Below are positions 2,820 through 54,699 of a stretch of DNA of 64,000 bases, one piece after another (within the stretch, counting starts at the first letter, position 1; each line of letters begins with the position of its first letter). The notes under the pieces are model-generated. The model did no database searches and was not told the DNA's origin. It saw only the letters and a list, made by a program, of their open reading frames with translations. The stretch comes from Hydrolagus colliei (Eukaryota), in the NCBI GenBank assembly GCA_035084275.1, contig CM068757.1, positions 9,734,001 through 9,798,000 on the forward strand, in the 5' to 3' direction. A program made the translations under genes and the position numbers.

Positions 2820-2919
2820 ATGTTGAGGGGGACAAACTCGGCTATAATGTCCTCACCCGGTGGACCTGCCAGGGCGCTGACCCTCGTCCTGATCCTCGGG
2901 GCTTGGATTGCAGGATCAG
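2820..2919 (+). CDS. Gene 1 exon 1, signal peptide
   Basis: [33 protein letters not shown], hydrophobic core, donor CAG|GTACAG, phase 1. Confidence 0.8.
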
Positions 2920-5900
2920 GTACAGAAAATGCGCAAACGTTAGACTGATTTGCTGTCTCTCAGCGTGGGGAGGGGGAGGGGGTTAGGGGGAGTTGTGGGG
3001 GAGTCACAGCCTGAAGCGTTCTGTGTTTGGAGTTTAGCTGATAATATGAAACACTGTATGAAGAACCCAAAACGGTGTTTTGGGTTCTTTGGACTTGGAA
3101 CGATTAGATAATATTGAAGCAGAATATTATGAGTAGTAACCATACAGTGTATTTCATTAACACATTATATTCTTTCAATTCACTCACTCCTTGAACCCAT
3201 CCAATCAGGTTTCCGCCCTGTTCACAGCATGGAAACTGCCCTGGTCAAGGTCACTAATGACATCTTAACCGCCTGCGACCAGGGCTCCCTCTGCCTCCTC
3301 GTCCTCCTTGACCTGTCTGCTGCGTTCGACACAGTCGATCACACCATCCTCCTCCAACGTCTTTCCTGCCACCTCAACCTTCAAGGCACAGTCCTTGACT
3401 GGTTCCATTCCTACCTGACCCACCGCCTATACTTTGTATCTTCCAACGGTTCCTCACGGCGTCCCTCAGGGCTCTGTCCTCGGCCCCCTCCTTTTCACCA
3501 TTTATACGCTCCCTCTGGGCGATGTCATCCGCAAACACGGGGTAAATTTCCACATGTATGTGGACGACAACCAGCTGTAACTTTCTGCCTCATCCCTCAA
3601 CCCCCAGACCATCGTTGTTCTGACAGCATGTCTGTCCGACATCGAGTCCTGGACTCCGGTGTGGGAGAGAATACAAGCTGCAGGTTGTGAATGAATGGCT
3701 GCTTGAGGAGGGAAGAGTTGGGAAGCCGATGAGCAGGAATTTGGGGTTGTCCAATCTAAATGTAAATAAATGCATGGATGAGGAACTCAGTGGGTGGGGT
3801 GGGGGGAGTCAGGTGATTAGTACATGGAGGTAGGGTGCCATCGAGGGTGGAGGCAGAGAGATGGAGTTGGGTGTCATCTGCATACATTTGGAAGCTAACC
3901 CCGTGTAGATAACATCGTGGTGGGGTATGAGCAGCTTGGAGAGGTGGGGAGGGTCCAGGGCGGGAAGTAATTTGAAAGTGAGAAGGAGGATATTCTAATC
4001 AATCCATTCAGCAACAAGCAGCCAGTGAGGGCTTGCAGACACGGGAGTAATGGGGGTGCGGAGTCTCAAATACGTGAGGCACAGTCAGCAGAATTTTGAC
4101 ACAAGCCTCAACCCCTCATTCTCTGGATAACCTGTGGGGTACAATTCTATAGGCACTAGCTGTGCTCCAGTGCTCTGCCTAAATGGCCATTAATTGCAAA
4201 TGCACATGAGCATGCTGTTTAACATTCACTCCTTGGTATTGTCACCAAACCCTCGGGTAGGACTAGATTTTCTTGTTTCAATATTCTTGAAGCAGTAGCT
4301 CATCCCAACCTATGAATTTTAACCTGCTTCTAATCTCAGATAATCAAACCTGCTATTCTGGTGTTTAAAATGCTCAGTTGTCATCAATGTTTTGGAATGC
4401 CTCTTGTTTTTACACAGATGCTTTGGCGATGACAATATTTAAAGACCCATTGGAGGTCTTATTGAATGAAGATGTTGTCCTTCAATGTAACGTAACCCTC
4501 AAGACTCCGGAGGAGCCCAGCCTTGAAATAATTGCAGTTCGGTGGTTTTTGGGGTTGAAGGAAGTGTATGCATACAATGGAGGGATATTTAAAGCTATCA
4601 GAAACGGATCAAAGATAATAGTAGAAAATCTGCAAAGGGGAGATGCCTCACTACATCTTCCTAAGGTTCAGATATCTGAAGCAGGAGTGTACAAGTGTAT
4701 GGTTTACTTGATGCCGACCACATCACAAGAAGAAAAGAGTTCAACCTTAATCGTGTCAGGTAAGCACAGTAATCTTGCCATGTATGTGTGTGTTGTGTGT
4801 GTTGTGTTGCGGCTTGTAATGCTGTATTCAACAGATCACAAGATAAGTTGAGATGATTCGCCCACAAATATACAGTCAATTCACTTTACAGTATATTCTG
4901 TGAAGCGCTTTGGGACATCGATAAGATGTGAAAAGCGCTGTATCAAATACAATAATTATTATTCTTATGAAGATGGCTGTTCAGACCATCTGAGCTCAAG
5001 CAACCAGGAAACCCATCGTCACATCACTGCATCAAACTATTCCAGTGTGCTATCTTCAACCACCCTTCTGTAAGGGTCTGGTGCAATAGTCAGCAATGAA
5101 CAGCACACATTAAAAATTAAATAACACAAGTTTATTGCTTGGTAATAAGGGAAGTAAATTAAATAAGGACACAGACAAAATGCATCAAGATAAACAAACT
5201 TATTCTCTAAAATTAGTAACTAACTCATCTATTCCGCATACACGTACTGCTCCCACCCCGCAGTGTATGGATGCGTGAGTGTGTGAATATACTACTGGGT
5301 TCTGGGTGTCTGTCAATAATAATAATCCTTAAGTTTATATAACACTTTCCACGACTAATTGTTGCCTCAAAGCGCTTCACAGAATACACAACGTCCTAAG
5401 TTGGGACAGGAGCAGTGGGGGAAGGTTCGTGGTTGGGGGAAGGAAAGTAGGAAAATTAACCGCATTGACCGTTTGTGGGTGAAACGCGGCAGCCAAATTG
5501 CGCACAGCGGTGTCCCACAAACAGTCGTGGAAATGGAGCCAGGGGAGAAAGGGGGAAAAGAGGATAAGAGGGAGAGGGAGGCGAAGGTGGGGAACAGTCA
5601 GATAGGAAAAGGGGAGAGAAAGGTGGCAAGGGAGAGAGGGAGGGCAAGGTGGGTGGGGGGCAAAATCAGAGAGAAAGGGGGGCAAGAGGAAGAGGGAGAG
5701 AAGGGGTAAAGGGGGGAGAGAAAGTGGGGAAAGGGAGCAAGGGAAGAAGAAGGGGGGGGGTAGGCCGGGGCAGGGGGGATTAAACAACAACAATAAACAA
5801 CAAAATCAACAACAATAAACAACAAAAGCAATAATAGTAATAACAAAAATAATAACCATCAAAAATAGTCCAGAAGCACCACCTCAAGGTCCAGTTTCCC

Positions 5901-8900
5901 TCTGCTTGTAGATTTCCTTGACTCTTTGCTCTGCCCTGCTTGCCTTTTACTCAACTTCTGTATGTCTCTCTCTCTTGCCAAGCTGTGTTTTAGTTTTGTT
6001 GATTGGGCTGATATTCTGCTTGACAGTCAATCAAGGCTTCTCTCTTTCTCTGTCTCTCTCACTTTTGCCAGTTAACCCTTCACTGCTATTATCCAGGCTG
6101 CAGTACCTGGACAATAACAATTGTCCTGGCTGATCACACAACAGCTGGACTCTCTCAGCAGCTAGTCTGACATTTGGTGTTGGCTGACCACAAACAACCA
6201 GACCTCCCCTCTTCTGACTGTTGGCTCACTGCTCCACTGTGCACTATCCTCCTGCTAGCCTGACCTCTCACTCTCCTGCTGGTTCTCTTTCGTTCTTTTG
6301 ATTGTTGAAATGATTGTTGGTTCTTGGTTGATTGTTGAAATGATTGTGCCTTTACCCCTCAAACCTTCCTATCTTTGAACCGTTTTTGCAGCATCAGGAC
6401 AATAACCAGATTTCTCCTGTTAGTACTGGCCATGCACCCACAAGAATCTGTTTATTGATCTTTGTCCAAATCATTCTCAAACTCATTCAGTTTTAAAAAG
6501 AATGTGTATTCTTAATCATTGTCCCTTAGTACTCCATAAACCCTTGCACCTGACTAGGTCAGTTCAATCCACAACTGTTTGTGGGATACAGAGGGTTGGT
6601 GGATCGCTACTCGGGGCATTAATCCCATTACAAAAAATTCTAATAATAATTTAGTGCTGAACACGTCTTATCAATGTCTCAAAGCTCTTCATAGAATATA
6701 TTGTAAAGTGAATTGACTGTATATTTGTGGGCAAAATGCGGCAGCCAATTGCGCACAGCAGCGTCCCACAAACAGTCGTGGATTGAAATAACCAATTTTT
6801 ATTATTTTTTGATTGGTAATTTTGTCATTGGATTTGAGTTTCTACCTTGGCTTCTTTTACTAATTTCAACTTTAAACCTTTAACCTCTTGTTCTACCATC
6901 TTGGTGCATCATGTTTTACACATTTATGCACCATCTGAGAAATCTTCTCTCAAGACTGATGAGCCCTATCTCATTTTGGCTAAAAGTCCCATTTAATAAA
7001 CAACCCATCAGTCAGAGTGATTGTTATTAACCCCTCTGCTTAAGCAACCATTGATGCCATCTAAAATGGGTCAGATGAACTGGTAACCATGCATTGGTCT
7101 CCAACACACCTGTCCATTTCTATCTCGGTGAGATGCTTCATTTGGGGAAACATAGTTACCTCATTCTTCTGTTGACCTATAGTGATGTAAATTGTTTCGT
7201 TAACTTGCCAAGATTAGATGTATGTAGCTCACTGGTGTTAGTTCATAAATCTTGGGGTTGAAATTCAAATTAGTCTTAATTCATATGGTATTGTTGTTGT
7301 TGTTTGTTGTTGTTGTTGTGATGTTGTAAAATCTAAGTGTTGTGCAAAATTGTTGCATTGAATTAGAAAGCCATTACTTCTAAGAAATGGGAATCATTGA
7401 TTTTTTAAGGAATTTTTCTTAATTTTGTGCAATTCAAAGTTCCAGGGTAGACAAGGTGGAATTTCTGTCTGCCTGTTGCTGTGTCTGAAGTAAATACAAG
7501 TTGTATTATTATTGTCACTGGTGTGTATGTTGTGAGTAGCAAATAAAAGTGCTGCTTGAAAGACAATACTATATTCATGTAAAGAAATTTGATAACCTCT
7601 ACAGCTCAGCCAAACGTCACCTTGTCTCCACGTCACATCAATGTAATCAATGGTTCAGTAGAAGACTTGATGTGTGATGTCCATGAATTTTACCCTGAGA
7701 TGCACAAGATCAGCTGGGTCAAGGTATCGCATGGTGCGGAGATGCAAATTACAACAGGTATCTTGACACGAGATGTAGTTACCAACAAGGACAGCACGTT
7801 CAGTGTTTCCAGCAAGTTGACAATCAGACCAACCGTGGACGACAATGGTAATCAGTACAGGTGTGTGGTGCAGCACAGAACATTCAGTGATACTCTTACA
7901 CTGGAGACAGAGCTGACTGTGGTAATTGAGAATCCACAGGAACCTGCAGGATATGGACCTGGAGCTGTTATTGGAGGTGTAATCGGTGTTGTCCTGATGG
8001 TGATTGTGGTCTTTGTTTTAGCGGCACTTTACTTTTGGAAGAAAACGAAGCAAGGTAAGGATCTTCACAGCCCTAAACAACAACGGCAGACGTGGGGGTG
8101 ATTTATTATACACTAAATGTTCTTGTGCACATTTTCTATTAATAGAGAACAGTCAGCTGACACTTGATCAACTGAAATAGATATTATCCTAATGACAGGA
8201 AAAAGTTTGTGTCAAGGCCTCTGCTCTCTGGGACATTTACCCGAATCTTTTCTAAAGACTTACCTGCTTGATCGTGCTTTTGGTCACTAGCAGCATTCCC
8301 TGCTTCCTCTTGCCACCTCACTCAGTGATCCACACTGTAAAGTACTTGTAAAGTACTTTGAGATGACATCAAAAGATACTGCATGAGGGCAAATTGTTGT
8401 TATAACTGTGGTGATCATTACCCAGGTTTCTTGAGAGAATTAGAATATTTGATGCTACTTTTTGTATGTTCCACAGCTCCTCCCAAGATCAATGAAATCA
8501 GCAAACCCACTCGCTTTATACATGGGCAGCGTGTCGATCTGAGTTGGGAAGTGACTGGTTTCAAACCAAAAGAGATAGAGATCATGATATTACTGACGAG
8601 GAAAGGAAAACAGCCACTGGAGCTATTTGTCTGGAAATTCACAAAGAATAAAAATGAACCAGGTCAGGTTGAAGAAGGTTTTCATCTCCTGAAAACAAAA
8701 AATGGATCTGACGGGGATAATTCGTTCTCTGCTGACACCCCACAATGTGATCCGCTCAAAAAAGGGACCTTCGGGGTAAAGTGTCCCATAAGGTTCTGTC
8801 CTGATGTATCTGAGGACGATGGAGCTCAAATAACAATGCAAGTTCATCACAAGGCTCTGAAACAGCCTCTCAAAAAATCTGTAACTTTAGATGTTGAAGG

Positions 8901-11900
8901 TAAGATTTGCATTGTGCACCTCCCTACCTCCACCGAACCACACCCAAACAATGGCAAGAACTAAAAACATGGAAATCTGGGGTATTGATCCTTTCTAATA
9001 ACAAAAAACTAATAATTTGGTCAATCAATCCAGAATTACAGTGTGAAATTGGCTGCCGGGTTACGCCCATAAAATATGCAGTCAATACACTTTACAGTGT
9101 ATTCTGTTGAGTGCTTTGAGAAGTCTCAACAGTGGGATAAGGCGCGATATCAAACACAATAATTATTATTATAATTAGAGGAAACAAGGTTATTCACCCC
9201 ATCGAGCCTATACTGGTGGTCACTCATCCACTGGAGCTATCTCCCCGTATCCCAATTCTCTACTCTTCCCCCTTACCCAATGATGAGCTGCTTCAAAACC
9301 ACTGCAACATTGTTACTATGTGAGCTCCAAGAGTTACCTTATGCCCAGTAACCCTGTGTGGTCAGTTGACGGATTGACTCAGTTGGTGATGCTCTCTTCT
9401 ATGGGACAGAAGGTCATCAGTATTTCAATTGGCATCTGAAAACCTGCCCTTCACCTCTGGCTATATAGAAGCTACCATAATCTCTGTCACTCTTACTGTG
9501 TGTCACTCTCTCTTTCTTTCCCTCTCAGCTTCAGAGAGAGAAGAGAATAGATTGAGACGGGAAACAAAAGGGGAGAAAGAGAGAGAGAGAGACAGGGAGG
9601 GAGAAAGAAGAACACATAAAAACACAGACAGTTTGTGTTCATACAACTTTTATATTAACATGGAAGTTCTCAGACAATAATAGCCTTGCACATGACATAT
9701 CACCTGATCATGCCTTTGAGACTTCACAGAATAAACTGTAAACAGAGGAATGTGGAGTAAGGAAACTTGCACAATATTTCGCCTGCTGGAAATCGTACCC
9801 AGGTCTCTCGCTTATGAGCTACAGGACTCCACAGAATATACTGTAAAGCAGATTGATTGTGTAATTTGTGTGCGACGAGCAGCAGCCAATTGTGCACAGC
9901 AGTGTCGCACAAATAGTCATGGATTAAATGACCAATTTATTATTTAAAAATATTTTTGAAGCAATTATTATCCCTGAAATACAATCTGAGAATCTACTAA
10001 TAACCAGGTTCCTACATACAGATGGGTAAACAGAGGCGTGTGGATTAAGATTATTTAAGGCCCACCATTTCCAGGAATCAAACGAAACCTGAGGTTGAAG
10101 TATGAACGGAATCCAGGGGGTCAATGTGAGACCCCAGTGTGAGCCCCTAGATTGATTTTATGATTTGTAACTGGACACAGTGTGGCCAGTTGTAGAATTA
10201 CAGCATAATGTTAATAATGTTTGTGGAGTCCTGTAGCTCAGTGGTTAGAGCACTCGCCTTACAAGCGAGGGACTTGTGTTCAATTCAAGCATGGTGAAAC
10301 CTTGGGCAAGTTGCCTTGCTCCACATGCCTGATAATAATCCCTCAAAAAAAAATTGGTCATTTTAATCCACAATTATTTGTGGGGCACTGCTGTGCGCAA
10401 TTGGCTGCCACAATTCACCCACAGTTAATTCACTTTACAGTATATTATGTGCAGTGCTTTGAGATGTCTTGAAGACGTGAGAAGCGCTATATAAAACACA
10501 AGGATTATTAGTAATAACATGCTACTTGTGTTTTACAGCTCCTCCCACGATGACTGAAATCAACATACCCTCTGGTATTGTGCACGGTGTCAATGTGCCT
10601 CTGACATGGGAGGTTAATGGCTTCAACCCACGGGCCATTGTAATTGCTGTATTGGTGAAGAGGAAAGTGGATCAGGAAGCAAAGCAACTGTTTCATTGGC
10701 AGATCCCAGAGAAAGAAAAGCAGCCAATCCCACATGATATTACCCCAAGCATTGCTACACAAGTTAACTCCTTCACTGCTGAGGTGGCAACGATTGAAAA
10801 GACAGATAAAGGGACTTTCAGTGTGAAGTGCAGCATTGCCATGTGTGCTGATGTAATCAGGGATAATGATGCTGAATTCACTGTTGAAGTTAAACATCAG
10901 GCTCTGGATAATCCTCTCACTAAAGCTATAACATTATGTGTCGCAGGTAAATTCTACCTCTGTATTTTCTCTCTCTCTCTGGTGCTAATATGTGAGTTGA
11001 AGTGCAGCATGCTGCTGTGTGTGTCCCTCTATGCTGCAATAGTTATTTTTGTTTGTGACAGTGACGTTCTATCACATAGACATCTGTGCCGACAGCCACC
11101 CCCCTTCCCCTCTCTATCCAGGCTCAGTGGATGACTCTGTCACTTTAAATCGCTCAAACACATTAGCTGAAGTGAACAATGCCATATTAATGCATGTTGT
11201 TGCTGTTGTGTTTGGGGGCAGCTCTGTTGCAGGTTGATGGGGAGGTGATGGGCTCTGTGGTAACGGTCCAGCTCAACATCAGCCTGAAATCTCATCTGTT
11301 TTCTTGAGAAACTTAAACAAATCGATTTTGAGATCCTCAGACTTGCCTACAATTCACCTCTTGCTCTCACACCTCGCTACCTCTCCAATCTGCAAACACC
11401 CACTTGTCAACCCACTCCGTTCGCTTGCTCAAACCTTCTGCATCTTCCTTGACCTGTCCACGAAACTATCGGCAGCCAGGCATTCAACAACGATACCCTG
11501 AACCTCTGAAACTCCCTACCCCAAACTCCAGCTCGCCCTCCATCTCCATCAATCATTGGATCACAGCTGAAGGTTTACTCTCTGACCATGCCTACCATCA
11601 CCTCCCCTCTCTCCCCAGCTCAGTATCAAACTACAATATTGCGAAGCTCATCAAGACGTTACCCTGCATGAAAGTTGCTGTATTAAATGGAAGTTGCTAT
11701 TGTTGAAAGAGTGTGTAACTCTGTCTGAAGCCTTGCTGCAGATTCTCATTGTAAATTGTGTGTGAGGCTGTGTGGTGTGTCCTGTAACTGGATTTAATCT
11801 TTACATGATATTTGTGTTTGTGTTATAGCTCCTCCCGTAATTACTGAATGGCTGGCAACCCCTGATATGACACATGGTGCCACCTCCACTCTGAGTTGGG

Positions 11901-14900
11901 CAGTGACATGGTTCAATCCACGTCCCATTGTAATTGTTGTATTACTGAAGAGAAAAGGGGAGTCGAGATCAAATAAGCTGTTTTATTGGCAGATAGAGAA
12001 AGAACAACCAGCAGGAAATAAACCAGTAAACATTCCTGTTAGCCATGTCACAAAGGATGACTCCATCATTCCAGAGATGGCGATGATTGTACAGGGAACA
12101 AATGGGACTTTCAGTGTGAAATGCAGTGTTACAATGAATGCTGATGTATCCAGGGATGATGGCGCTGAGTTCACTGTTGAAGTTCAACATGAGGCTCTGG
12201 AGAATCCTCTCACTGAATCTGTAACATTGCGCGTTAAAGGGGGTAAGTGCTGCCTCTGTCTGTTCTCTTCTCTCTCTCCCTCACACATCAGTGTAGAAAT
12301 ATTCAGGTGAAGGTGATGATTTTACAAACGGGAGTTTGAAATGATCTGTTAATCTCCAGAGTGAGTTTTGCGGCTGTGTGTGAAGAGAGGCCACGTTATT
12401 CAGGGCTCCGCAGTCACGTGGTTAAAATTATTTTGTAAAAATAAATAATCTGGTGATTTCTGACAAATACGTAATGTTAAAATCTAAAATCAAATGTGTA
12501 TATATGCATTCATATGGGTGTCAGCTCAGAGCATGAAGCACTCTAACCTCTCGTCCATAAGGTTGTGGGTTCACATCACATCAGGACCTGAACCTACAGT
12601 CTAGTAGGGACTTGTAATAAGGAAATGAAATGATAATATTTTAAAGAATTTGATTGTCGACAATGGTTTCAATTTCAAATAATAATTCCCTTTATTACCA
12701 TCTAGGATGACACTGCAGTGTGTGCTGGGGGGGCTCTGTAATGCTGGAGTCTGTTATTTCAGATGTTAAACCATAATCTCATCTGGGTGTTCAGCTAAAT
12801 GGCCGGCAACCCCTGATAAGACACACTTCAGCACTAAAAGAGTTGGGAATTTCTCCAGTGTTTTATCCTCCACCTCTTGCTCTATGTGTATGTCTAGCTC
12901 TCTCTCTGTCTCCCTTTCCCCCTTTCTCTCTTCCTTTCTCTTGTAATCAGTCGGGATAAAATGTAGAATTTGAAATTATTTCTTTGTCAAAAGGCCAGTG
13001 TGCACCCTGTCTGGGGGCAGCTCTTGCAGGTTACTGGAGGCTTAGACAGGCTGAGTGCTTATGATGGAGTTTAACATCACTCTACAGCTCCAGCCTGGTG
13101 CTCTCTGCCATGACTTGCAGGCTTTTCACTCGTTTCTGTGGATTCAGTTTCCAATTTGTATCTGACACAGACATGGACTTGAATGTTTTTATGTGGATTT
13201 GTCATTTTGTTTTGTAGTTCCTCCTAAAATTACATTTGCAAATCAAAAGAAAATGAAACATGGTGAGAATGCTGAGCTGCAATGGACAGTGACTGGGTTC
13301 ACTCCTGGGAAGATCTCGATTGTTTCCAGTCTACGGAGGAAAGGAGAGGAAGTAAGACAACTGTTTCACTGGGAAGTTCCAAATAAGGAAGCATTTCAAA
13401 GGAAGAGAATCCCCTGGAATCTTGAGGACAAATCAGAGAGATCCAACAATGTTGCCTCCTTCACTGCAGTGGTGCCTAAATGTGAACACGACACCAAAGA
13501 AGGAACCTTCAGAGTAAATTGCAGAATCAACATGACTCCTGATGAGTCCACGGATGATGGAGCTGAATTAATTGTTCAGGTTCAGCATGAGGAATTTCCT
13601 GATTTTGTCACTGACAGTTTAAAAATAAACCTTGCTGGAGGTAGGTTCTGCCATCAATATTGTGTCCTCTCTGTCCCATATGCTCTGTGGCAGTGTTTAG
13701 AATAAAGTAACAGTTTCCTCCACAATGGTTCAGCAACTGAGATCACCACTCAGTGAAACCCAGAGCCTCTCAGTCCAGAAGGTGGCAGGATATGGCATCT
13801 GAGAAATCTCGTCATAGTGCGTAAGATTATCCAAACCAGAGAGTTCATCTGTGCCATCTGCATGTGGAAATTTCCCTTTTTCCAGAATGGAATGCTCACA
13901 GTAGTAAACAAACTTGGATCAAGAGCTTGACTAACAGGACTACCTCAGGATTGATTTTACTCCGATATTGTCAAGTGCATTATTGTTCAAACAGAGAGTG
14001 AGTTTGCCCCAGTGTCCTGGCCAACTATCCCCGTTATAAAATCTGTCACTTAATTCATCGCTATTTACAAAATGTATGCATCCTGTTTACCTGTTACCAG
14101 AGAACATTAGCTGCACGTTGGCAAGATACAAAGCTTGGAGGTCACAGAGTATGTGCTGGAATACTGCGGGAATTTAAGAAGGGAAATGCGCATAGTTTGC
14201 TATTTCTAGTTAGGACCACACCACCTGTTAAGGCTTTGGTTTGCAGGGTTAAAAAGACCTGAATAGGTGGAATCCCTGCTCTCAGTGACTGGTCTTGCTG
14301 TCCCAGGCCTGCTGATGAGCCAGGCCGACTGGTTTATAATCAGCAATGGCCTGAAGAGCTGGGAAACCACTTGGAACAGTAACTGAGACTGAGTCTCAGG
14401 ATTGATTTGGTTCCGATAATGCATTCTCAAGTGCATTATTGTTCAAACAGAGAAATGAGTTTGTCCCAGTGTCCTGGCCAACAATCCCCGTTATAAAATA
14501 CATTACTTAATTCACTGCTGTTTGTGGGGCACTGCTGTGTACAAGTTGGCTGACACATTTGCCTTCAAGTACAGAGCCAGTGAACTTCACACAAATATTC
14601 TGTGATGCGCTCTGAGACGTCTCAGTGATGTGATAAGGTGTTATATGAGTTGCAAGAATTGTAAGGATTATTAGAATGTTGTAGCCGTCTTATCTCAGAG
14701 GAGATACTGCACACCTCTGTTCCCCCTCCCCCCAGGTGGGCTGAGCTGAGCTGAGGCAGTAGCTGTGCAGCTCTGTTTGGTCTCTGTGGGTGAATTGTCT
14801 GCCCACATTGACAGTCTGGGCTGAGACATGAGAAACCCTGGTAATTAATAGAGAAAATAATCCAAGCTCACCTCCTGATCAGCACCTTGGATACCTCTCA

Positions 14901-16642
14901 CCTTCACAATATCGGACAGGTCAGATCTCTGCAGCTGGGAAGTACACACACCACACACAGGCTGAGTAACATTATTACAGAGTGTAAGTTATTCAGGAAT
15001 CATTTACATTTTGGTTCCACTGGGTGCTGTGTTCATGTGTCCGTCTGGCTCACTTGGCAGTGCTCTTGTCTCTGTGTCAGAAGGTATTGAGTTCAAGCCC
15101 CACATTGACACACTGGCTGTCACTCCAGTGCAGTGCTGCAATGCTTATATTGTGTTTCTGTTTTATAGTTCCTCCTCAAATTATTGGACCCAACCTACCC
15201 AAGACAATTCTGCATGCTGTGAAAGACACAATGACATGGGTAGTTACTGGGTTCACTCCTGGGAAAATGACCATCATTTTCAGCCTGAAGAGGAACGGGC
15301 AGCAACAGCAAATACAACAACTGTTTCACTGGGAAATTCCCAACAAGGAAATATTTCAAGAGTCGATAGGAGGAGCTTTTCCTCTCCAGGACCGATCGGA
15401 TAGAGACAATAAAGATGCGTCCTTCACTGCTTTGGTGCCAAAGTGTGAACCTATTGGCGATGGGACTTTCAGAGTAAATTGCATCATTGATATGATTCCT
15501 GATATTGATACGGATAATGGAGCTGAATTATCTGTTGAGGTTCATCATGATGTTATTGTTGGCTCTTTCACTAATAATGCAATATTACTCATTACTACAG
15601 GTAGGTTCCTCGATCATTGTTCACCAGACTCTCTCTGTCTCTGTACTCTGTGCCAATGTTTAGGACATTGTAATGATTTGTTCCCCCATGGCCCAGCAGC
15701 TGAGGTCATTGCTCAGTACAGGGTTGAGTCGAGTCTCTCAGGCCAGAAGCTCTGAGATTCGAGTGCTGGTCTGGGAGCTGATCTGAGCTGACCTGGGCCA
15801 GTAGCTGTGCTGGTCCGTTTGTATGTCAGCCTGGAGCTTTGGTAGCACTTTTGCCTCTGAATCAGAAGGTTGTGAGTTCAAGCCCCACGTCAGGACTTGG
15901 AATCACATCGTCTAAGCTGACACTCACTCCAACGCAGTGCTGGATGTCTGTGCATTATCGGTGGTGCTGTACTTTAAATGAGATGTTAAACGCACGTTCT
16001 ACCCGCTAGTTCAGGTAGACATTGTAGATCCCATAGCGCTATTCGAAAAGGGAAGTTTCTTCAATCCCACAACTAACATAGGTCACTCATCCCATGGTTG
16101 TTTCTGGGACATTACAGTATGCAAACTGGTTGCTGTGTTCGCCAACAAAATATACAGTTAATCCACTTCACAGTATAACCTGTGTAGCACTTTGAGACAT
16201 AATAAGGTCTATTTCAAATGATAGGATATTAGAGAATATAATCAAAGCTCACGATCACCACAGTGGATATCTCTCACCTCAGATGTATCAGGTCTCAGAT
16301 GAGATCTCTGCAGCTGGGAAGCAACAGCCTTAATGCAGTGTGCACAGTATGCAGAGGATAAGACCATAAGATTTAGGAGCAGCAGTAGGCCATTAGGCCT
16401 CTCGAGCCTGCCACGCCATTCAATAAGATCATGGCTGATGTTCTAATCTAACTCCACCTGCCCACCTTATCCCCATATCCCTTAAAACCTTTATTCATAA
16501 GAAATCTATCAGGATGTAAGTACTCAGAGTACATTTTACAGGATGTTGTAGTTTTTTCTGGGGCAGCTCTATTGCAGGTTAATGTTCGGGTGATTAATAT
16601 ATTGAAATTTCCTTTAGTTTAGATGTGGAAATATTCGCATAG
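2820..16642 (+). CDS. Gene 1: B7/NCR3LG1(B7-H6)-like type I membrane protein, leader-V-C1-TM plus 5 predicted cytoplasmic Cys-less C1-like domains, ~1003 aa
   Basis: Exons 2820-2919, 4418-4759, 7605-8054, 8477-8899, 10539-10946, 11829-12242, 13218-13640, 15169-15600, 16623-16642. All GT-AG; internal lengths are multiples of 3; total 3012 nt with no internal stop. Confidence 0.85.
3205..3650 (+). mobile_element. L2-clade LINE RT fragment (frameshifted)
   Basis: [12 protein letters not shown]...[20 protein letters not shown], then [13 protein letters not shown] and FHMYVDD in a shifted frame. Confidence 0.85.
3690..3960 (-). mobile_element. L2 RT fragment, opposite orientation
   Basis: Minus strand reads [16 protein letters not shown] around 3860-3905. 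Confidence 0.7.
4418..4759 (+). CDS. Gene 1 exon 2, IgV domain
   Basis: VVLQCNVT...VRWF...[22 protein letters not shown]: canonical V-set Cys/Trp/Cys; acceptor tacacag|, donor TCAG|GTAAGC; 342 nt. Confidence 0.92.
5530..5860. repeat. Purine-rich low-complexity tract followed by (CAA)n
   Basis: GA-rich run, then aacaacaac/aataat repeats. Confidence 0.75.
7605..8054 (+). CDS. Gene 1 exon 3, IgC1 domain plus transmembrane helix
   Basis: [10 protein letters not shown]...ISW...FSVSSKL...[13 protein letters not shown], then [31 protein letters not shown]; 450 nt; donor CAAG|GTAAGG. Confidence 0.92.
8477..8899 (+). CDS. Gene 1 exon 4, post-TM C1-like domain 1
   Basis: APPKI...[10 protein letters not shown]...LFVW...TFGVKCPI...[12 protein letters not shown]; 423 nt, AG/GT, open frame. 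Confidence 0.85.
10222..10515 (+). mobile_element. tRNA-derived SINE with Deu-domain-like core, ending just before the exon 5 acceptor
   Basis: Head gagtcctgtagctcagtggttagagcac...ttcaattc; core tttgtggggcactgctgtgcgcaattggctgcc; tail gcgctatataaaacacaaggattatta. Confidence 0.8.
10539..10946 (+). CDS. Gene 1 exon 5, post-TM C1-like domain 2
   Basis: [10 protein letters not shown]...LFHW...TFSVKCSI...[12 protein letters not shown]; 408 nt, AG/GT. Confidence 0.85.
11829..12242 (+). CDS. Gene 1 exon 6, post-TM C1-like domain 3
   Basis: [10 protein letters not shown]...LFYW...TFSVKCSV...[12 protein letters not shown]; 414 nt, AG/GT. Confidence 0.85.
13218..13640 (+). CDS. Gene 1 exon 7, post-TM C1-like domain 4
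   Basis: [10 protein letters not shown]...LFHW...TFRVNCRI...[12 protein letters not shown]; 423 nt, AG/GT. Confidence 0.85.
15169..15600 (+). CDS. Gene 1 exon 8, post-TM C1-like domain 5
   Basis: [10 protein letters not shown]...LFHW...TFRVNCII...[12 protein letters not shown]; 432 nt, AG/GT. Confidence 0.85.
15838..16220 (+). mobile_element. Old SacSINE1/AmnSINE1-like DeuSINE
   Basis: ggtagcacttttgcctctgaatcagaaggttgtgagttcaagcccca head, gctgacact...gagatgttaaac...gatcccat.gcgctatt middle, Deu-like tail. Recognised from memory of the family consensus. Confidence 0.6.
16356..16510 (-). mobile_element. CR1 (HER1/HE1-like) 3' end fragment
   Basis: ccataagatttaggagcagcagtaggccatt...gccattcaataagatcatggctgat is the reverse complement of the shark-type CR1/HE1 3' tail. 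Confidence 0.65.
16623..16642 (+). CDS. Gene 1 terminal coding exon (D)VEIFA*
   Basis: Acceptor tttag|AT homologous to 496/497 and 31441/2; followed by the shared 3' UTR-like sequence; candidate AATAAA at 17447. Confidence 0.6.
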
Positions 16643-18179
16643 TCTGACGTCCGCCATATGGACGGTTCGTGAGGAGTGTGGGATGGCCAGTTGTTACACA
16701 CAAGACACATTCCACTGCATGTTCGCAACATACACAGTCATCATCATCATGGCTTTCGATTCTGACAACCACAACGTGAATATTGATCAACTTTGTCAGT
16801 CGCTGAAGAGCGATCAAAAATGTGTCAGTTTAGCAGAAATATAAAGAATCGCTGTGTAATGGTAATCTGTTAAGAGATAAAGTGCTCTGCATCTGTCTGT
16901 TATCAAAACGCTCACACACTAGATCTGTTTCTCATTAAGGTGCTTCGGTTGAATGTTTCTCAGATTCCTGCCCTGAGTCAGTCAGTAGAAAGTTTCCCAA
17001 ACCATGCTATCCATCAAACCCATGCTATCCATCAAACCCAAATCCTGCAAACCCATAGACTGCGATTGTGAAGTGGGCACAGTGCTGTCCAGGGACATGC
17101 TGCCAGGTTGTCGATGGATCTGGCTTTGTGACTGTGGCTTCCTGAGCGCAAACCCTGTTGCCATGGGGAAAGGTCCCGATTCCAGGCTGAGACCTTCTGA
17201 CCTGTAAGAGAAGGTGTTTCAGCCCCTCTCACTATCCCAGGACAACAAGCCCAATTGGTGCACCCAATTGCTGCCCTGTTTGCAATCAGTGGATTCAGCC
17301 CTCACCAGGAAGTGTGGCCTCCTTGTCTGTGTGTTTCAGGCTGTACTTTCACTCAAAGGCTGTAGGAAAATGAACATTTTTGAAACAGACGATGGGTGCA
17401 ACTGAAATCTGTCAAAATTAAATGCATTTTGTCATTCCAACACTACAATAAATATTTATATTGTTTACAACCTTAATCTGTCTGTGATTTTTTTTCAAGC
17501 ATATTTGTATATTCTGCATATCATTGTTGCTAAAGTTTAAACTACATCTGACGGTCCCACTGAAGACTTTTCTAACTCACTCCTGGTCTTCCTAGCTCCA
17601 TAATTCACGAACTGCAACCCAAACACTCAACACATTAATCACTTACTACCTCACAGTACACTCTGTTATTAAACAGTTGCACAGTCGTCGTTTCCCAGAT
17701 TCATATCAACATATATACTGTATACATATACAGTATATATAAAATACATTTAAAGTAATAAATGCCCATATATGAATAAAAACACAGTCCAATTTATCTG
17801 TACGACATCATTTTATTAGGTCATTCCATGGTATTGAATGGTTTTAGGAATTAAAACAAGCATACATTTTATTTTGTTTCATAGTTTGTCACATGTCGCT
17901 TATAATTGTATGAAAGCTGAAAGGGTTAAGAAAAATTGCTCGCTTTACAGGGCCTGGGAACCCTGCTGGGGTTTATATTCCATGACTGTTTGTGGGACAC
18001 CACTGTGCACAATTTGGCTGCCGCATTTTGCCCACAAATAGTAAATTTTCCTACTCTTCTTCGTCCTGTCCCTAACCCTCCCCTCCCTGCTCTTGTACAA
18101 TGCCTTGGGACGTCCTCATGACATGAAAGACGCTATATAAATGTAAGTTTTGACTGATTGATTGATTGATTGAAAAAGT

Positions 18180-21591: not shown

Positions 21592-24500
21592 ATGTTGAGG
21601 GGGACAAACTCGGCTATAATGTCCTCACCCGGTGGAGCTGCCAGGGCGCTGACCCTCGTCCTGATCCTCGGGGCTTGGATTGCAGGATCAGGTACAGAAA
21701 ATGCGCAAACGTTAGACTGATTTGCTGCTGGATCCCACCGCTGAGCGAGACACAGAGACACACCGCTAACTGGAGGCTGCCCTGGGGGGGGGGGGGGGGG
21801 GAGCACAGCCGGAAGGGTCTGTGTTTGGGGTTTAGCTGATAAACAGCGAGCGGTGGAAGCAGAGAAGCCAGAGAAGCGTCAGGGTATTTTGGGGTTGGTA
21901 CATCTGGCGGCCCGCGGGCCAATGTCACTCCTCTACCCCCACCCTCCCCCTCATTTCCCTGTCGCCCTCCCCCCCCCACCCCTCCCTCCCTATCCCAGGA
22001 ACGTGATGTTTCTGGAAGCCAAACACTAAATTGTTGCTTGTGTGGCCCGCAGACGTTTCCCAAATGAGGGCATCTTGTCCTCCTCAGCATTAAACAACAA
22101 CAACAACTTCGATTTATACAGCGCCCTCCACGCCAGACGGCGTCTCAGAGCGCCTTAAAGGGGTATTCACCATGAAGGAACTTTGGTGGGGGCTGAACGC
22201 AAAGGGTCGCCCTTATCCCACCCTGCAGAAAACATTAACAACTCATCTCCGCAGACTTAACTAACGCTTCGTGTTTTCGTTTCCAACCCGAGGATGATTG
22301 AAAGAATACGAAAGCAGGTTATAATAGATAATGCAACACGCAGCGTCCTTAAAAGTTATCTGCAATCTTTTGTGGAACATGCCTTGAACGGTGTCTTCTT
22401 GGTGACTCCTGAGAAAAAATTGCCATTTTACTACAAGGGAATGACAATTTGCTGCTGGGGAATTTTTGAAATGGCTGCTGGGAAAATCCCCAGCACTTTA
22501 TATGTTAAAAGTTTAACAGTTAAACCAACGCCCTGCTGTGCGCTGGCGGTGAGGACTTTAACTCGGTGTTGCACAACTCTCCACAGTCAGCGCAAATTGC
22601 ATTGTTGTGATGTATTGCATACAATATCAAGTTGTAGTGAAGCAGATACATTGGAAAGATTGAGGAGCCTCAGTCATGGAAACCCAATCTTGTGACTGGC
22701 TGCCTCGCCAGCCTGAGAGAAGCCGTCGCTTCCTCCACTGCTGCCTAGTGGCGGTGTTTAGGTATGGAATCAACAGTGTAACACCATTGGAATACATTAT
22801 CCTCGCATTTCATTTAATGCCTTATCAAGATGTCTCCAGCTTTTCGCGCTCGCGTTGTTACAGAGTCGCCTAAGATTAAGATGCCGTTTGTTCCTTCGAA
22901 CTGTGCTTTTGGTCATCAACACAATTCTGCAAAAAGGCAACGCAACATTTGTTCCAGTTGGATTTCAGGAGCTTCATATGTACAACAAAACGACAACAAA
23001 ATGACACTTGTAGAGCTCCTTTCACATCAGGGGGATGTCCCAAGGCGCTGACTTTGTATGAGACTTTGTAAAGGATTGTGTACAGTATAAGTAAATCCAG
23101 ATCAATGCGTTCAGATAAATAAATGCAACAGGATTCCGGGTTACGAGTAAAGGAGCACAATTTCACTTGAGACTAGATAGAAGTTTTTATTTAACGCAGA
23201 TTATAATCGATGACTGAATTGGGTTACCAGGTAGGGTGATGGGTGAGGTAAGAATAATTGGCTCATTTAAAAAAATTAAGTGCCGGGAGGGTGGGAAGAT
23301 AGTTGTATTGGAGGGTTGAAATTAGCCGAAGGGTCCTCTTCTTCATCCAAACCTCTCTTGTGATTTAAGATTATGACTTATTGTAATTTAAGATTAAGTT
23401 ATAAAAGTACGTTTATCATCTCCACAGCTCAGCCAAATGTCAGCTTGTCTCCACAACACATCGTTATCACCAATGGCTCGGCGGGCTTTCTGAGATGTAA
23501 AGCAACTGGAAATGTTCCTCAGGATACCGTAATCAAATGGATCAAGGTATCAGGTGATGGGGAGACAGAGATTAATTCCTCAGATTTCGGCACTGCGTTT
23601 ATAGATGCCAACAGTGTTTCCAGCCAGTTGAGGATCAGACCAACCATGGACGATGATGGCAATAAGTACAGGTGTGTCGTGACATACACCCCATCCAATA
23701 CTGTTATTGCACAAGAGGCAAAGCTGACTGTGGAGGAACCCACTCTACCATGGCCAATTATTGGAGGTGTCATTGGTGGAGTATCGTTGATAGTGTTGAT
23801 TATATTAGTACCTTGCATCTGCTGCCGCCGGAAACAAACTGAAGAATTTAAGAAAGAAAGAGGTAAGATTTGGTTATTCGATTATAAATGGTGTGGTAAT
23901 ATCTCTTGCCTTAAACAATCAGTAGATGAAATGTCCATATGAAGGCAAAAGGGGGCCGAAAATGTTTTGGTTTCCAACTGGGTTCCTTCCAATGGAAACT
24001 GAGCAAGGATGAACTCCTTCCAGTAACCAAACGGTGTCTTCTAGGATCTGCTGACAGGTAGGCGTCCTGTGAATCAGAGTGACTTTATGCAGATGTATTA
24101 TCTGTGAGAAACACTGAAACAGATTAAAGATTCTATGTATGGGTATTGTCTGTGTTACCAATGGATGATGTTATGCAGATAAGAAATAGTTGAGGCCAAA
24201 GGATGGGATGTGATGTAAAAGGCGCTATACAAATGTAATTTTGTTGTAGTTGTTACAGCAATTGCCTCAGTGAACACCAGCGAGGACTAAACAGAAATGG
24301 GATGAAAAGCTGTTGGGAGAAATTTAGTGTAGATATTTGACTGGGACTATTACAGTTGGGAACCTTAGTGATATACCCCACACCAGAGTCTGTTGATGAA
24401 TATGAGGTGCAGTCAACTTTCTCATTACTATTTACTGTACTACTATGAGTGATTGCGTGGACCTCCTTAACTTGTTTCCCAGCACAAACCTGTGCTGCAA

Positions 24501-27500
24501 GTCACCTAACATCAGACAATAGGGACCTGATATTCCTTCTCCTGTTTCACACATGTGACAAGTGAAAGAAATTGACCCAACATGGACAACATATATATGA
24601 GGGGATCAATGCTGTATTAGGCTTTCACTGAACACATTCTGCACCATAATGCAGCTATATAATAATAATCATCCTTGCATTTGATGTAGCACCTTATCAC
24701 GTCTTTGAGTCGTCTCAAAGCGCTTCCCATAATATACTGTAAAGTGAATTGACTGTATAGTGTGACACTGGCAAAACTCGGCAGCAAATTGCGCAACAAA
24801 TTATTATTCTTTTGAAGGGATTATTACCTCTGGAAAAGTGACCCACCAATCGACTAACAACTGTGTTCCTACTTATTGATGGGTGAACAATGGGTGTGGG
24901 GTAATGGATCTTGCCACACGTGTGCAGCTGGAAAACGGGGTTGAAGTTGCGATATTTCTTAATGGAATTTCCTAGTACGAAATCAATATGGCCAAATGGG
25001 ATTTCCTTCCAAGACCCTTGATGTCTGTCACACCAAACCAGAGGAATGCTCCAATATGGAGTTATTCCAGGGTAGAGTTATCACAGGTCAATTGGAATTC
25101 TAATGGAACCCCTTAAGGTACACCACAAATTAGAAACTAATATCGCACGTGAGAGATGTAAAATGAAATGTGCGATTTTGTTCTAATTCCCTTATAGGTT
25201 CTCCTCAGATCAATCTATTGACTAAACAAGACCAGTTTAAGGATGGTGTGGCGTCTCGTATAAAATGGGAAGTTACTGGGTTCACTCCCCGGAACATATC
25301 CATTGCTTTATTATTGAGAAGAAAAGGAGAAGAATTTCAGAAATTATATGATTGGAATTTGATAAATAATGAAAACCTAGAGAATGGCGAGAAAGGTCTT
25401 CTCTTAAACTCGTCAAGTGTACAGGATTGGAATAAGAAAGAAGACTCCATTACTGCTGAAATCTCCAATTGCATTCAGTTGAAGGATGGCACGTTCAACG
25501 TGAAGTGCACGATAACAGTCCGTCCTGATGCACCCAGGGATGACGGAGCTGAAGTCTCACTGGAAGTTCACCATGATACCCTTAAGACGCCGCTCACTTC
25601 ATCATTTAAGTTAGTCATTGAAAGAGGTAAGGATTATGATCTGCATTCCTCTCTCACCAAACAAAAAACCACATGTGGAAACATAGAATCATAGAAATTT
25701 CACAAAAGGGACAAATACTGGTTATCTAATTCCACAGTATATTTGACCCAGATTGTCCATGGTGTAGGTTTGGGATCCTCAGAGTGTTCTTGAGATCTTT
25801 GAGATAAATTCTACAGATTAACTTGCTATTCGGAGCACTGACTCTCAGCTAGTTGTGATGGTACAGTATTGACATGTCCTAATGCCAACTCCCAAATGGG
25901 CTCTGTTGTATTATCTGTGAAAACCATTTGCCCTTCAGTTACCCAAATACACTTTCTGAGGTCCCATTTGGTTGAAGTGCTGCAGTGGACTTCATAATTT
26001 GCATTTATTGCGGCTTGGTATATTGCCATCTGTGGTGTAGATATACGACAAGGACTAATAGAGTTGGGAACCTCAGTGATATACTCTACACCAGGGTCTG
26101 TTGATGAACATGAGATGCAGTCAACTTTCTGATTACTATTAATCACTGTGAGCGATTGTGTGGAACTCCTTAACCTGTTTCCCAGATGTGACAAGTGTCT
26201 GAATGAAATTGATCCAAGATGGATTTTATTGTCCATAAACACAGAATTGTATATGAGGGGATGACTGCTGTATTAGTCTTTCACTAAACAAATTCTGCCC
26301 CCTAATGCAGCTATATAATAATAATCATACTTGCATTTGATGTAACACATTTTCACTCCTGTGAAGCGCTTTGAAACGTCTAGAAGATGTGAAAAGCGCA
26401 ATATCAAATGCAAGGATTATTATTATTATCTCAAAGTGCCCAACAGAATATACTGTAAAGTGGATTGACTCAATAGTGTGACACTGGTGAAATGTGGCAG
26501 CCAACACAACAACAAAATTGCACTTATATAGCGCCTTTCATGTCGGGAGGATGTCCCAAAGCACTGAAATAGTGCACCAAATTTTTTTTTTTGGTAGAGA
26601 TTATTACCTCTGGAAAAGTGATCTGCTGATCGATTGACATCTGTGTTCCTACTTGCTGCTGGGGGAATAGTGAGTGTGGAGTAAGGGAACGTGCCCAATG
26701 TGTGCAGCTGGAACACTGGGTAGAATTTGTGATATTTCTCAATGGAATTTCCTGGTAAGATATCAATGATGGCCAAATGGGGTTTCGTTCCACGAGCCTT
26801 GATGTCTGTCACATCAAACCAGAGGAATACTCCAAAACGGGCTTATTCCGGGGTAGAGTTATCACAGGTCATTTGGAATTCTAATAGAATCCCTTAAGGT
26901 ACGCCACAAGTTAGAACCCAATATTGCACTTGAGAGTCTTGAAATGTCTGATTTTATTCAAATTCCTTTGTAGTTTCTCCTCAGATCAATATATTGACCA
27001 AACCCGACCACGTTAAGGATTGTGTGGCGTCTCACATAGCTTGGGAAGTTACTGGGTTCACCCCCCGGAACATAGCCATAGCTTTGTTTGTGAGGAGAAA
27101 AGGAGAAGAATCACAGAAATTATATGATTGGAATTTGATAAATAATGAAGACCCACTAAAGAATGGCGAGAAAGATCTTCTCTTAAACTCGTCATGTGTA
27201 CAGGATGGGAATAAGAAAGAAGACTCCATTACTGCTGAAATCTCCAACTGGATTCAGTTGGAGGATGGGACATTCAGCGTGAAGTGCATGATAACAGTTT
27301 GTCCTGATGCATCCAGGGATGACGGAGCTGAGGTCTCACTGGAAGTTCACCATGAGACCCTTAAGACGCCGCTCACTTCATCATTTAAGTTAATCATTAA
27401 AAGAGGTAAGGATTGTGTTCTGCATCCCTCTCCCACCAAACAAAACCCACATGTGGAAACATAGAATCATAGAAATTACACCAAAGAGACAAACAGAATA

Positions 27501-54624: not shown

Positions 54625-54699
54625 GTAAAAACAAATTAGAATTTTTTTTACATCAACAAGAATTTGTATTTATATCTCACATAAGTACATGTGGTGGGA

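What the first reader, a model, noticed from the sequence alone, without database searches (positions are those of the whole stretch)
7605..15600. B7/B7-H6-like receptor with five C1-derived Ig domains on the cytoplasmic side of the membrane
Seen: after leader, canonical IgV and canonical IgC1, exon 3 encodes a ~26-residue hydrophobic helix followed by KKTKQ. Five more 136-144 codon exons follow, all stop-free, phase 1-1, GT-AG. Each has C1 hallmarks (xPP start, xVxGFxP, GTFxV, DDGAE, VxH) and none has a second TM. The TM shares an exon with C1, so it cannot be skipped alone. Established: C1-set domains (Ig, TCR, MHC, beta2m, tapasin, SIRP, some B7) are extracellular or lumenal and disulfide-bonded, while the familiar intracellular Ig domains (titin, obscurin, MyBP-C) are I-set. 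Inference: a type I receptor whose ~700-residue tail is a tandem array of cytosolic C1-derived domains. It could act as a scaffold or oligomerisation module, or as an integrated decoy for pathogen proteins that target C1 folds. I know of no description of this architecture but cannot search the literature.
Basis: partly seen in the sequence, partly recalled or inferred. Interest (0 to 1): 0.95.

Follow-up and report, generated by a model that had tools for sequence, protein, structure and literature searches.

The report
B7-H6-like receptor with Ig-domain tail
This is a real gene for an immune-ligand-like membrane protein (a relative of human B7-H6) whose roughly 700-residue tail behind the membrane anchor is built from five antibody-type domains; that layout occurs from chimaeras to lizards in public protein sets but I found no description of it, and whether the tail really sits inside the cell is still untested.

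Summary
Gene A (leader 2847-2919, IgV 4418-4759, IgC1+TM 7605-8054, five 136-144-codon exons 8477-15600, short terminal exon 16623-16642) gives a 994-aa open model. It has one signal peptide and one TM. A paralogue, gene B (21619-31455), has the same layout but no V exon.

The five tail domains (D-type) have no Pfam hit. Profile-profile comparison aligns them end to end with the gene's own C1 domain (hhalign 88%, E 2.8e-6). All ten copies have lost the canonical cysteine pair, and AlphaFold2 predicts a beta-sandwich.

Callorhinchus milii annotations join the same exons. A profile search finds V-C1-TM-D-type(-C1-like x7) proteins in sharks, rays, bichirs, sturgeon, coelacanth, lungfish, amphibians, turtles and lizards. 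They are named "uncharacterized" or NCR3LG1 (B7-H6).

For a cytosolic tail:
- a single stop-transfer TM and no second signal;
- glycosylation sequons enriched before the TM (O/E 1.70) but near chance after it (1.15);
- the cysteine pair intact in 91% of pre-TM domains against 45% of post-TM domains;
- purifying selection on the tail.

Against: predicted isoforms that skip the TM exon exist in five other lineages, so a secreted form is possible. Topology is unproven. I found no publication describing this architecture.

The parts
2847..2919 (+). Gene A leader exon ([24 protein letters not shown], phase-1 GT donor). An in-frame ATG also lies at 2820.
   Evidence: tblastn with the C. milii leader; sequence read
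4418..4759 (+). Gene A IgV exon (114 codons, phase 1-1)
   Evidence: Pfam V-set E 4e-8; splice sites
7605..8054 (+). Gene A fused IgC1 + transmembrane + KKTKQ exon
   Evidence: Pfam C1-set E 1.2e-12; hydropathy peak 3.16. The TM part matches the separate TM exons of genes C and D. Same fusion in C. milii.
8477..8899 (+). D1: first post-TM C1-derived Ig-like domain exon (141 codons)
   Evidence: AlphaFold2 beta-sandwich, pLDDT 83
10539..10946 (+). D2 exon (136 codons)
11829..12242 (+). D3 exon (138 codons)
13218..13640 (+). D4 exon (141 codons)
15169..15600 (+). D5 exon (144 codons), ends in phase 1
16623..16856 (+). Gene A terminal exon: 6 codons (DVEIFA) plus stop at 16640-16642, then a conserved 3'UTR block. 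Poly(A) signals from 17417.
   Evidence: About 70% identical copies at 432-716 and 31402-31672. The gene B copy gives DGGN-stop, identical to the C. milii protein ends..
21619..21691 (+). Gene B leader exon
23428..23862 (+). Gene B fused IgC1+TM exon. There is no V exon between leader and this exon.
   Evidence: The C. milii orthologue LOC103174897 is also V-less.
25198..30474 (+). Gene B D-type exons E1-E5 (25198-25626, 26974-27405, 27956-28363, 28831-29262, 30046-30474)
31442..31672 (+). Gene B terminal exon (DGGN-stop at 31453-31455) plus 3'UTR. AATAAA at 31872.

Best explanation
Gene A, and its V-less paralogue gene B, are expressed members of an old and so far uncharacterised branch of the B7-H6 (NCR3LG1) lineage.

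Shown:
- The layout is signal peptide, IgV, IgC1, one 25-26-residue stop-transfer helix with a basic C-flank, then five tandem 136-144-residue beta-sandwich domains, then a 4-6-residue end.
- The tail domains arose from the C1 domain. They have lost the B-F disulfide and the Trp pin and gained about 35 residues between strands C and D.
- The ancestral family form, found from chimaera to lizard, is V-C1-TM-D-type followed by about seven C1-like domains.
- In chimaeras the D-type module alone was amplified (3, 5 or 8 copies) and the TM became fused to the C1 exon.

Inferred:
- The product is a type I membrane protein. Its V-C1 ectodomain is displayed as a ligand for an NKp30-like receptor.
- Its tail is a segmented rod of five disulfide-free Ig-like modules in the cytosol.
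- The tail works as a scaffold, spacer or oligomerisation arm that tethers or clusters the ligand. This is the same principle as the FnIII tail of integrin beta4.
- Because every tail exon is phase 1-1, rod length can be tuned by exon duplication or skipping.
For: Gene structure and open reading frame.

C. milii models:
- They join leader-(V)-C1TM-D exons and end in DGGN, exactly as predicted from the window.
- The C. milii locus has the same fused C1+TM exon.
- An independent C. milii sequence, V9K7L7, differs at 8 residues from the genome model. It spans V-C1-TM and the whole array of the long paralogue.

B7-H6 affinity. C1 derivation. Fold.

Family pattern: 108 of 124 proteins that have at least 200 residues before their first D-type domain carry a TM just upstream of it.

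Evidence for a cytosolic tail:
- There is only one TM, and the array has no signal peptide of its own.
- Sequon O/E is 1.70 before the TM (236 observed, 138.8 expected) against 1.15 after it (335 versus 292.3) across 77 representatives.
- In the window, the ectodomains carry 1.75-2.8 sequons per 100 aa and the tails 0.4-1.0.
- The canonical Cys pair is present in 91% of pre-TM C domains and 45% of post-TM domains, and in 0 of the 10 window D domains.
- Shark relatives have acidic, Ser-rich linkers in the tail.

Evidence that the tail is functional:
- omega is 0.3-0.77 among paralogous D exons.
- Between species, E4 and E5 are 80-84% identical (omega 0.43-0.61). The ectodomain C1TM exon is 61% identical.
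- Fusing the TM to C1 in chimaeras removes the option of skipping the TM alone, yet the array stayed conserved.
Against: - No transcript or protein data exist for this species, and topology is inferred from sequence only.
- In relatives with a separate TM exon, annotated isoforms differ by exactly that exon: Bombina 34 aa, Rana 37 aa, plus Heterodontus X3, Hemitrygon X6 and Microcaecilia X3. A secreted form with a lumenal array probably exists in the family.
- Three post-TM domain positions keep Cys-Trp-Cys in every lineage examined. That could reflect disulfide formation.
- Post-TM sequons are still slightly above chance (O/E 1.15).
- The scaffold function is an analogy, not a result.
- NKp30-type receptor binding was not tested.
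Confidence: 0.55

Rival explanations
1. The Ig array functions in the lumen or outside the cell. The relevant product is a TM-less secreted isoform (V-C1-D..., or here leader-(V)-D1-5 after skipping the whole C1+TM exon). The TM-containing form with the array behind the membrane is a minor or by-product species.
For: - Isoform pairs differing by exactly the TM exon are annotated in five lineages.
- All exons are phase 1-1, so skipping exon 3 stays in frame.
- Domains 2, 3 and 8 of the ancestral array keep Cys-Trp-Cys everywhere.
- Post-TM sequons are slightly above chance.
Against: - In the window genes and in C. milii the TM cannot be skipped alone.
- The C. milii isoforms seen here differ in D-exon number, not in C1TM.
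- None of the ten D domains has the disulfide pair.
- Sequons are not enriched in the tail although they are in the ectodomain.
- 55% of post-TM domains family-wide lack a complete Cys pair.
Confidence: 0.25
2. IGSF1-like processing. The internal hydrophobic segment would be a processed linker (signal peptidase or SPP), so that Ig domains on both sides end up lumenal.
For: IGSF1 is a precedent for Ig domains flanking an internal hydrophobic linker (own knowledge; the mature form is described in PMC6552037).
Against: - Only one 25-26-residue hydrophobic stretch is present, followed within about 6-15 residues by the first domain.
- There is no second hydrophobic segment to re-initiate translocation, and no C-terminal TM.
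Confidence: 0.05
3. Annotation or assembly artefact, or decaying duplicates. The D exons would belong to a separate or dead gene and would not be translated together with V-C1-TM.
For: No expression data exist for this species. Gene B lacks a V exon and has a LINE inserted between genes A and B.
Against: - Ten of ten exons are open, with intact splice sites and matching phases.
- omega is below 1 within and between species.
- There is domain-by-domain orthology with C. milii.
- No leader exon was found between exon 3 and D1.
- Even a separate transcript would lack a signal peptide and therefore be cytosolic.
Confidence: 0.05

Closest known systems
Human B7-H6 (NCR3LG1)
   Same: Signal peptide, IgV, C1-type IgC and a single TM. 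It is the best solved-structure match of the ectodomain (E 7e-23). Lizard and frog family members are named NCR3LG1 by NCBI.
   Different: The human tail is a non-Ig sequence of about 170 residues (own knowledge). Here the tail is five Ig-like domains and the TM is fused to the C1 exon. NKp30 binding was not tested.
Uncharacterised long NCR3LG1-like proteins of other jawed vertebrates (e.g. C. milii LOC103174895, Latimeria LOC102345720, Acipenser LOC117435091, Lacerta agilis NCR3LG1)
   Same: V-C1-TM followed within 10-30 residues by a D-type domain. This is the same family by profile search.
   Different: - They continue with about seven C1-like domains that keep the Trp pin, in a conserved ordinal Cys pattern.
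- Their TM is skipped on its own in annotated isoforms of several lineages, so there it must be a separate exon.
- The window genes contain only amplified D-type modules.
Integrin beta4 cytoplasmic tail (four FnIII domains)
   Same: A type I membrane protein that uses extracellular-type beta-sandwich modules as a long cytosolic scaffold (own knowledge). This is the nearest working analogy.
   Different: Unrelated sequence and fold class. Its cytoskeletal partners are known, whereas none is known here.
IGSF1
   Same: Ig domains on both sides of an internal hydrophobic region.
   Different: IGSF1 is resolved by co-translational cleavage and has a C-terminal TM (own knowledge). Neither feature is present here.
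Titin, obscurin and MyBP-C intracellular Ig domains
   Same: Disulfide-free Ig-like domains that work in the cytosol as tandem rods.
   Different: Those are I-set domains of soluble proteins. The D domains give no I-set or any other Pfam hit and derive from a C1 domain.
Shark UrIg2 (V plus nine to eleven C1 domains, C-terminal TM)
   Same: A tandem C1-type array in a cartilaginous-fish non-rearranging IgSF gene (PMC12227049).
   Different: In UrIg2 all domains precede the TM and carry the canonical disulfide and the Trp pin.

Membership tests
B7 family, B7-H6 (NCR3LG1) lineage | Signal peptide plus membrane-distal IgV and membrane-proximal IgC ectodomain | tested here: met
   V-set E 4e-8 and C1-set E 1.2e-12; leader exon
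B7 family, B7-H6 (NCR3LG1) lineage | Closest sequence relatives are B7-H6 rather than other IgSF | tested here: met
   The top three PDB sequences are B7-H6 (E 7e-23 to 1e-22), then CD276 and TAPBPR
B7 family, B7-H6 (NCR3LG1) lineage | Single-pass type I membrane anchor | tested here: met
   One hydropathy peak (3.16) with a basic C-flank. This is prediction only.
B7 family, B7-H6 (NCR3LG1) lineage | Orthology or synteny with NCR3LG1 | tested here: inconclusive
   Only NCBI names of lizard and frog relatives support it. No synteny data were available.
B7 family, B7-H6 (NCR3LG1) lineage | Binds NKp30-type receptor | not testable with these tools
   Needs a binding assay
Ig C1-set (for D1-D5) | Match to the C1-set profile (PF07654) | tested here: not met
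   No Pfam family at E<=1 for any of D1-D5
Ig C1-set (for D1-D5) | Canonical B-F disulfide and strand-C Trp pin | tested here: not met
   Trp replaces the B-strand Cys in 10 of 10 domains. The invariant Val (V122) sits where the hhalign alignment places the C1 F-strand Cys. The hhalign alignment shows no Trp at the position matching the C1 strand-C Trp.
Ig C1-set (for D1-D5) | Homology to bona fide C1 domains | tested here: met
   - hhalign versus the cluster's C1 domains: 88%, E 2.8e-6, full length.
- Weak in-register hits to Ig constant domains and the B7-H6 C domain.
- tblastn E 0.01-0.08.
Ig C1-set (for D1-D5) | Seven-strand C1 topology | tested here: inconclusive
   The AlphaFold2 beta-sandwich has extra strands in the roughly 35-residue insert. 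The best Foldseek hits are VH/nanobody domains, TM about 0.55.
Intracellular I-set Ig (titin-like) | I-set profile match | tested here: not met
   No hit
IGSF1-type internally cleaved IgSF | Two hydrophobic segments in the linker and a C-terminal TM | tested here: not met
   A single hydrophobic segment and no C-terminal TM

The most novel reading that the evidence does not exclude
C1-derived immunoglobulin domains work in the cytosol as the ancestral tail of the B7-H6/NCR3LG1 lineage. That tail has been conserved from chimaeras to lizards, lost in mammals, and expanded to a pure D-type array in chimaeras. It couples the intracellular state of the cell, or its cytoskeleton and trafficking machinery, to the display of an NK-cell ligand. 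This would be the first cytosolic use of the MHC/antibody-type constant domain.
Probability: 0.4. Interest if true: 0.9.

Novelty: new variant of a known kind. Interest (0 to 1): 0.75.

Why it matters
B7-H6 is the tumour and stress ligand of NKp30, and how its surface display is controlled is poorly understood. These data suggest that the ancestral form of the gene carried a 700-1000-residue array of constant-type Ig domains behind the membrane anchor, and that mammals lost it.

If the array is cytosolic, it breaks the rule that C1-type domains are lumenal, disulfide-bonded modules. It would also point to an unknown intracellular partner system for an NK ligand.

If instead the array works in a TM-skipped secreted isoform, the family is a new class of large soluble B7-like proteins. 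Either outcome can be tested with simple tagged constructs and existing shark, frog or lizard RNA-seq.

Tried and rejected
- Internal donor that removes the TM: GTG|GTAATT at 7921/7922 lies just before the TM, but it is phase 0 and incompatible with the phase-1 acceptors (read).
- Short-tail membrane isoform by intron-3 read-through ([17 protein letters not shown]-stop). No AATAAA or ATTAAA lies in intron 3 of gene A, and one ATTAAA lies in that of gene B. This is not excluded but unsupported.
- The conserved 280-bp block as the leader exon of the next gene. Rejected: the true leaders are elsewhere, and the block gives DGGN-stop, matching the C. milii C-termini.
- A V exon for gene B: none found by tblastn.
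- Pfam on D1-D5: nothing.
- The D profile against PDB sequences: only weak hits, E 0.02-1.7.
- Foldseek cannot separate C1 from V for this enlarged domain.
- TRF missed the 1.88-kb repeat because its period limit is 500; the repeat finder found it.
- ARAGORN: no tRNA-like genes.
- Literature: seven searches and two papers searched for key terms gave no description of a post-TM Ig array in B7H6-like genes. Flajnik et al. 2012 and Ohta & Flajnik 2015 are not held, so prior mention there cannot be excluded.
- Per-gene sequon tests have low power. Only the pooled family test is informative.
Full report
**1. What is in the sequence**

The window is vertebrate DNA with no N runs. It carries a cluster of B7-like genes, all on the + strand.

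Gene A consists of these exons:
- leader, 2847-2919 ([24 protein letters not shown])
- IgV, 4418-4759 (Pfam V-set, E 4e-8)
- IgC1, 7605-8054 (C1-set, E 1.2e-12). It runs on in the same exon through [26 protein letters not shown] and KKTKQ.
- five further exons: 8477-8899, 10539-10946, 11829-12242, 13218-13640 and 15169-15600

Every exon is a multiple of three in length. Each has a polypyrimidine-AG acceptor and a GT donor, and all are phase 1-1.

D5 ends in phase 1. A block about 70% identical at 432-716, 16583-16856 and 31402-31672 supplies the last exon. For gene A it reads DVEIFA-stop (16623-16642).

The full model is 994 aa, with one signal peptide and one hydrophobic segment.

**2. A second copy**

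Gene B has the same plan without a V exon:
- leader, 21619-21691
- C1+TM, 23428-23862
- E1-E5, 25198-30474
- terminal exon giving DGGN-stop at 31453-31455

tblastn finds exactly ten D-type exons in the window (E 1e-18 to 1e-36 between copies). The terminal-exon copy at 432-716 implies a third such gene just upstream of the window.

Genes C (V 36567, C1 37754, TM exon about 38694-38780) and D (V 58064, C1 59220, TM exon about 60157-60243) are conventional. Their TM is on its own exon and they have no D-type exons.

**3. What the tail domains are**

Pfam gives nothing for D1-D5, even at E<=1. The ten copies share 15 invariant columns:
- Trp where C1 domains have the B-strand Cys
- GF.P
- G.F.V.C in strand E
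- D..A (DDGAE in most copies)
- Val where the F-strand Cys would be

Profile-profile comparison of the ten D domains with the four ectodomain C1 domains of the same cluster aligns them end to end (hhalign 88%, E 2.8e-6). The D domains carry a roughly 35-residue insertion between strands C and D. Weak in-register matches to Ig constant domains and to the B7-H6 C domain agree with this.

AlphaFold2 with the ten-sequence alignment gives a confident beta-sandwich (pLDDT 83, pTM 0.78). Foldseek finds Ig domains, but the best hits are VH/nanobodies (TM about 0.55), because the insert adds strands.

So the domains are C1-derived but no longer C1-set members. They lack the disulfide, the Trp pin and any profile match.

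**4. Relatives**

Word-indexed search finds only Callorhinchus milii proteins, all 'uncharacterized':
- LOC103174897 is V-less, has five D domains and ends in DGGN. It is 68% identical to gene B.
- LOC103175084 and LOC103173843 have C1TM plus up to eight D domains. They are about 65% identical to gene A.
- LOC121850342 has V-C1TM plus three D domains.

The C. milii locus has C1 and TM in one exon, as here. The window therefore most likely comes from another chimaera-like fish (inference).

A profile of the ten D domains, scored against 1.84 billion representatives, gives 202 hits at E<=1e-3 and 114 at E<=1e-10. Among proteins with at least 200 residues before the first D-type domain, 108 of 124 have a TM immediately upstream of it.

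Named members come from these groups:
- chimaera
- sharks: Heterodontus, Scyliorhinus, Cetorhinus, Heptranchias, Mustelus
- rays
- bichirs and sturgeon
- coelacanth and lungfish
- caecilians, newts and frogs, including Xenopus
- turtles and lizards

Their names are 'uncharacterized', 'Ig-like domain-containing' or 'natural cytotoxicity triggering receptor 3 ligand 1'.

The common long form is V-C1-TM-D-type plus about seven C1-like domains. It has a conserved ordinal pattern of Cys/Trp/Cys states: D-type Cxx, CWx or xxx, then CWC, CWC, CWx, CWx, xWC, CWx, CWC. This pattern is seen in nearly the same form in chimaera, horn shark, ray, bichir, coelacanth, lungfish, caecilian and frog.

The ectodomain's best solved-structure match is human B7-H6 (E 7e-23).

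**5. Is the array really joined to the TM?**

- In C. milii the NCBI and Ensembl models join them.
- UniProt V9K7L7 (1079 aa) differs at 8 residues from the genome-derived model. It is therefore an independent sequence, which I believe is cDNA-derived. It spans V-C1-TM and the whole array of the long paralogue.
- The tblastn search with the leader peptides found no leader between exon 3 and D1.
- D1 has no early Met.

Any product other than one that skips exon 3 therefore puts the array on the cytosolic side.

**6. Indirect evidence on topology**

(a) N-x-S/T sequons in 77 representatives:
- before the TM, 236 observed against 138.8 expected (O/E 1.70)
- after the TM, 335 against 292.3 (O/E 1.15)
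- window genes: 1.75-2.8 per 100 aa in the ectodomains against 0.4-1.0 in the tails

(b) Canonical Cys pair:
- 91% of pre-TM C domains have it
- 45% of post-TM domains have it
- none of the ten window D domains has it

(c) Shark D-only relatives have acidic, Ser-rich linkers between tail domains. That composition is more typical of cytosolic than of extracellular linkers (inference).

(d) The tail is constrained:
- omega is 0.3-0.77 among paralogous D exons.
- Between the window and C. milii, E4 and E5 are 80-84% identical (omega 0.43-0.61). The C1+TM exon is 61% identical (omega 0.57).

**7. Evidence the other way**

Annotated isoform pairs differ by exactly the TM exon:
- Bombina NCR3LG1 X1/X2, 34 aa
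- Rana LOC120917008 X1/X2, 37 aa

TM-less V-C1|D junctions also occur in Heterodontus X3, Hemitrygon X6, Microcaecilia X3 and a Scyliorhinus model.

A secreted form in which the array is lumenal is therefore likely in the wider family. Three array positions keep Cys-Trp-Cys in all lineages.

In chimaeras the TM is fused to C1, so this route needs skipping of the whole exon. The C. milii isoforms seen here vary in D-exon number, not in C1TM.

**8. Interpretation**

Most likely (0.55), this is a type I B7-H6-like ligand. Its tail is a cytosolic rod of five disulfide-free Ig-like modules acting as a scaffold or spacer, with length tunable through phase 1-1 exons. The scaffold role is by analogy with integrin beta4 (own knowledge) and is not shown.

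Rivals:
- secreted-isoform function (0.25)
- IGSF1-like processing (0.05; it lacks the second hydrophobic segment and the C-terminal TM)
- artefact or dead gene (0.05; contradicted by the open exons, the splice sites and omega below 1)

**9. Novelty**

The architecture sits in public protein sets but is unnamed. Seven literature searches, and two papers searched for key terms, gave no description of it. Two key B7H6 evolution papers could not be read.

I rate it a new variant of a known kind: the B7-H6 lineage with a post-TM Ig array. It would be of high interest if the cytosolic location is confirmed.

Noticed in passing
window 21619-31672: Gene B is a V-less paralogue (leader spliced directly to C1+TM, then five D-type exons, ending in DGGN-stop). 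Its C. milii orthologue LOC103174897 is also V-less. A B7-like ligand without its V domain is odd in itself.
   Followed up: partly
window 432-716: This is a third copy of the conserved terminal-exon/3'UTR block. It implies another D-type gene ending just inside the start of the window.
   Followed up: partly
window 16616-16642: Gene A's terminal exon has a 1-nt deletion relative to the other two copies and a tandem AG. Its C-terminus is therefore DVEIFA-stop (or V-stop from the first AG) instead of DGGN-stop.
   Followed up: partly
window 36567-39568 and 58064-61027: Genes C and D are conventional B7-H6-like genes (V, C1, separate TM exon). Each has a cytoplasmic exon containing an ITIM-like SNIYETV motif.
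   Followed up: no
window ~44280-53400: A tandem repeat of about 1.88 kb occurs in five copies that are 92-100% identical. Each copy carries open frames rich in acidic residues (e.g. ...SETTGENIDEISVAETQSDKDKDLEIRKEAGEKENDEPEE...). They may be amplified cytoplasmic-tail exons of gene C, or a satellite-like unit.
   Followed up: partly
window 19256-21315 (+), 53946-54635 (-), 3133-3687 (+): These are LINE-type reverse-transcriptase fragments. The first lies between genes A and B, just upstream of gene B's leader.
   Followed up: no
related proteins P0196/P0031 (Bombina), P0197/P0041 (Rana), P0156 (Heterodontus), P0170 (Hemitrygon), P0194 (Microcaecilia): Annotated isoforms lack exactly the TM exon. 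This predicts secreted V-C1-Ig-array forms in distant lineages.
   Followed up: partly
related proteins P0005, P0007, P0011 (Heterodontus, Scyliorhinus): Sharks have independently amplified the D-type domain (up to seven near-identical copies). The copies are separated by acidic Ser/Asp/Glu- or Gln/Glu-rich linkers.
   Followed up: no
window, many sites (e.g. 4853-4968, 9035-9175, 10333-10523, 61692-61876): An interspersed repeat of about 100-190 bp is present in more than 15 copies across the window. ARAGORN finds no tRNA-like gene in it.
   Followed up: no
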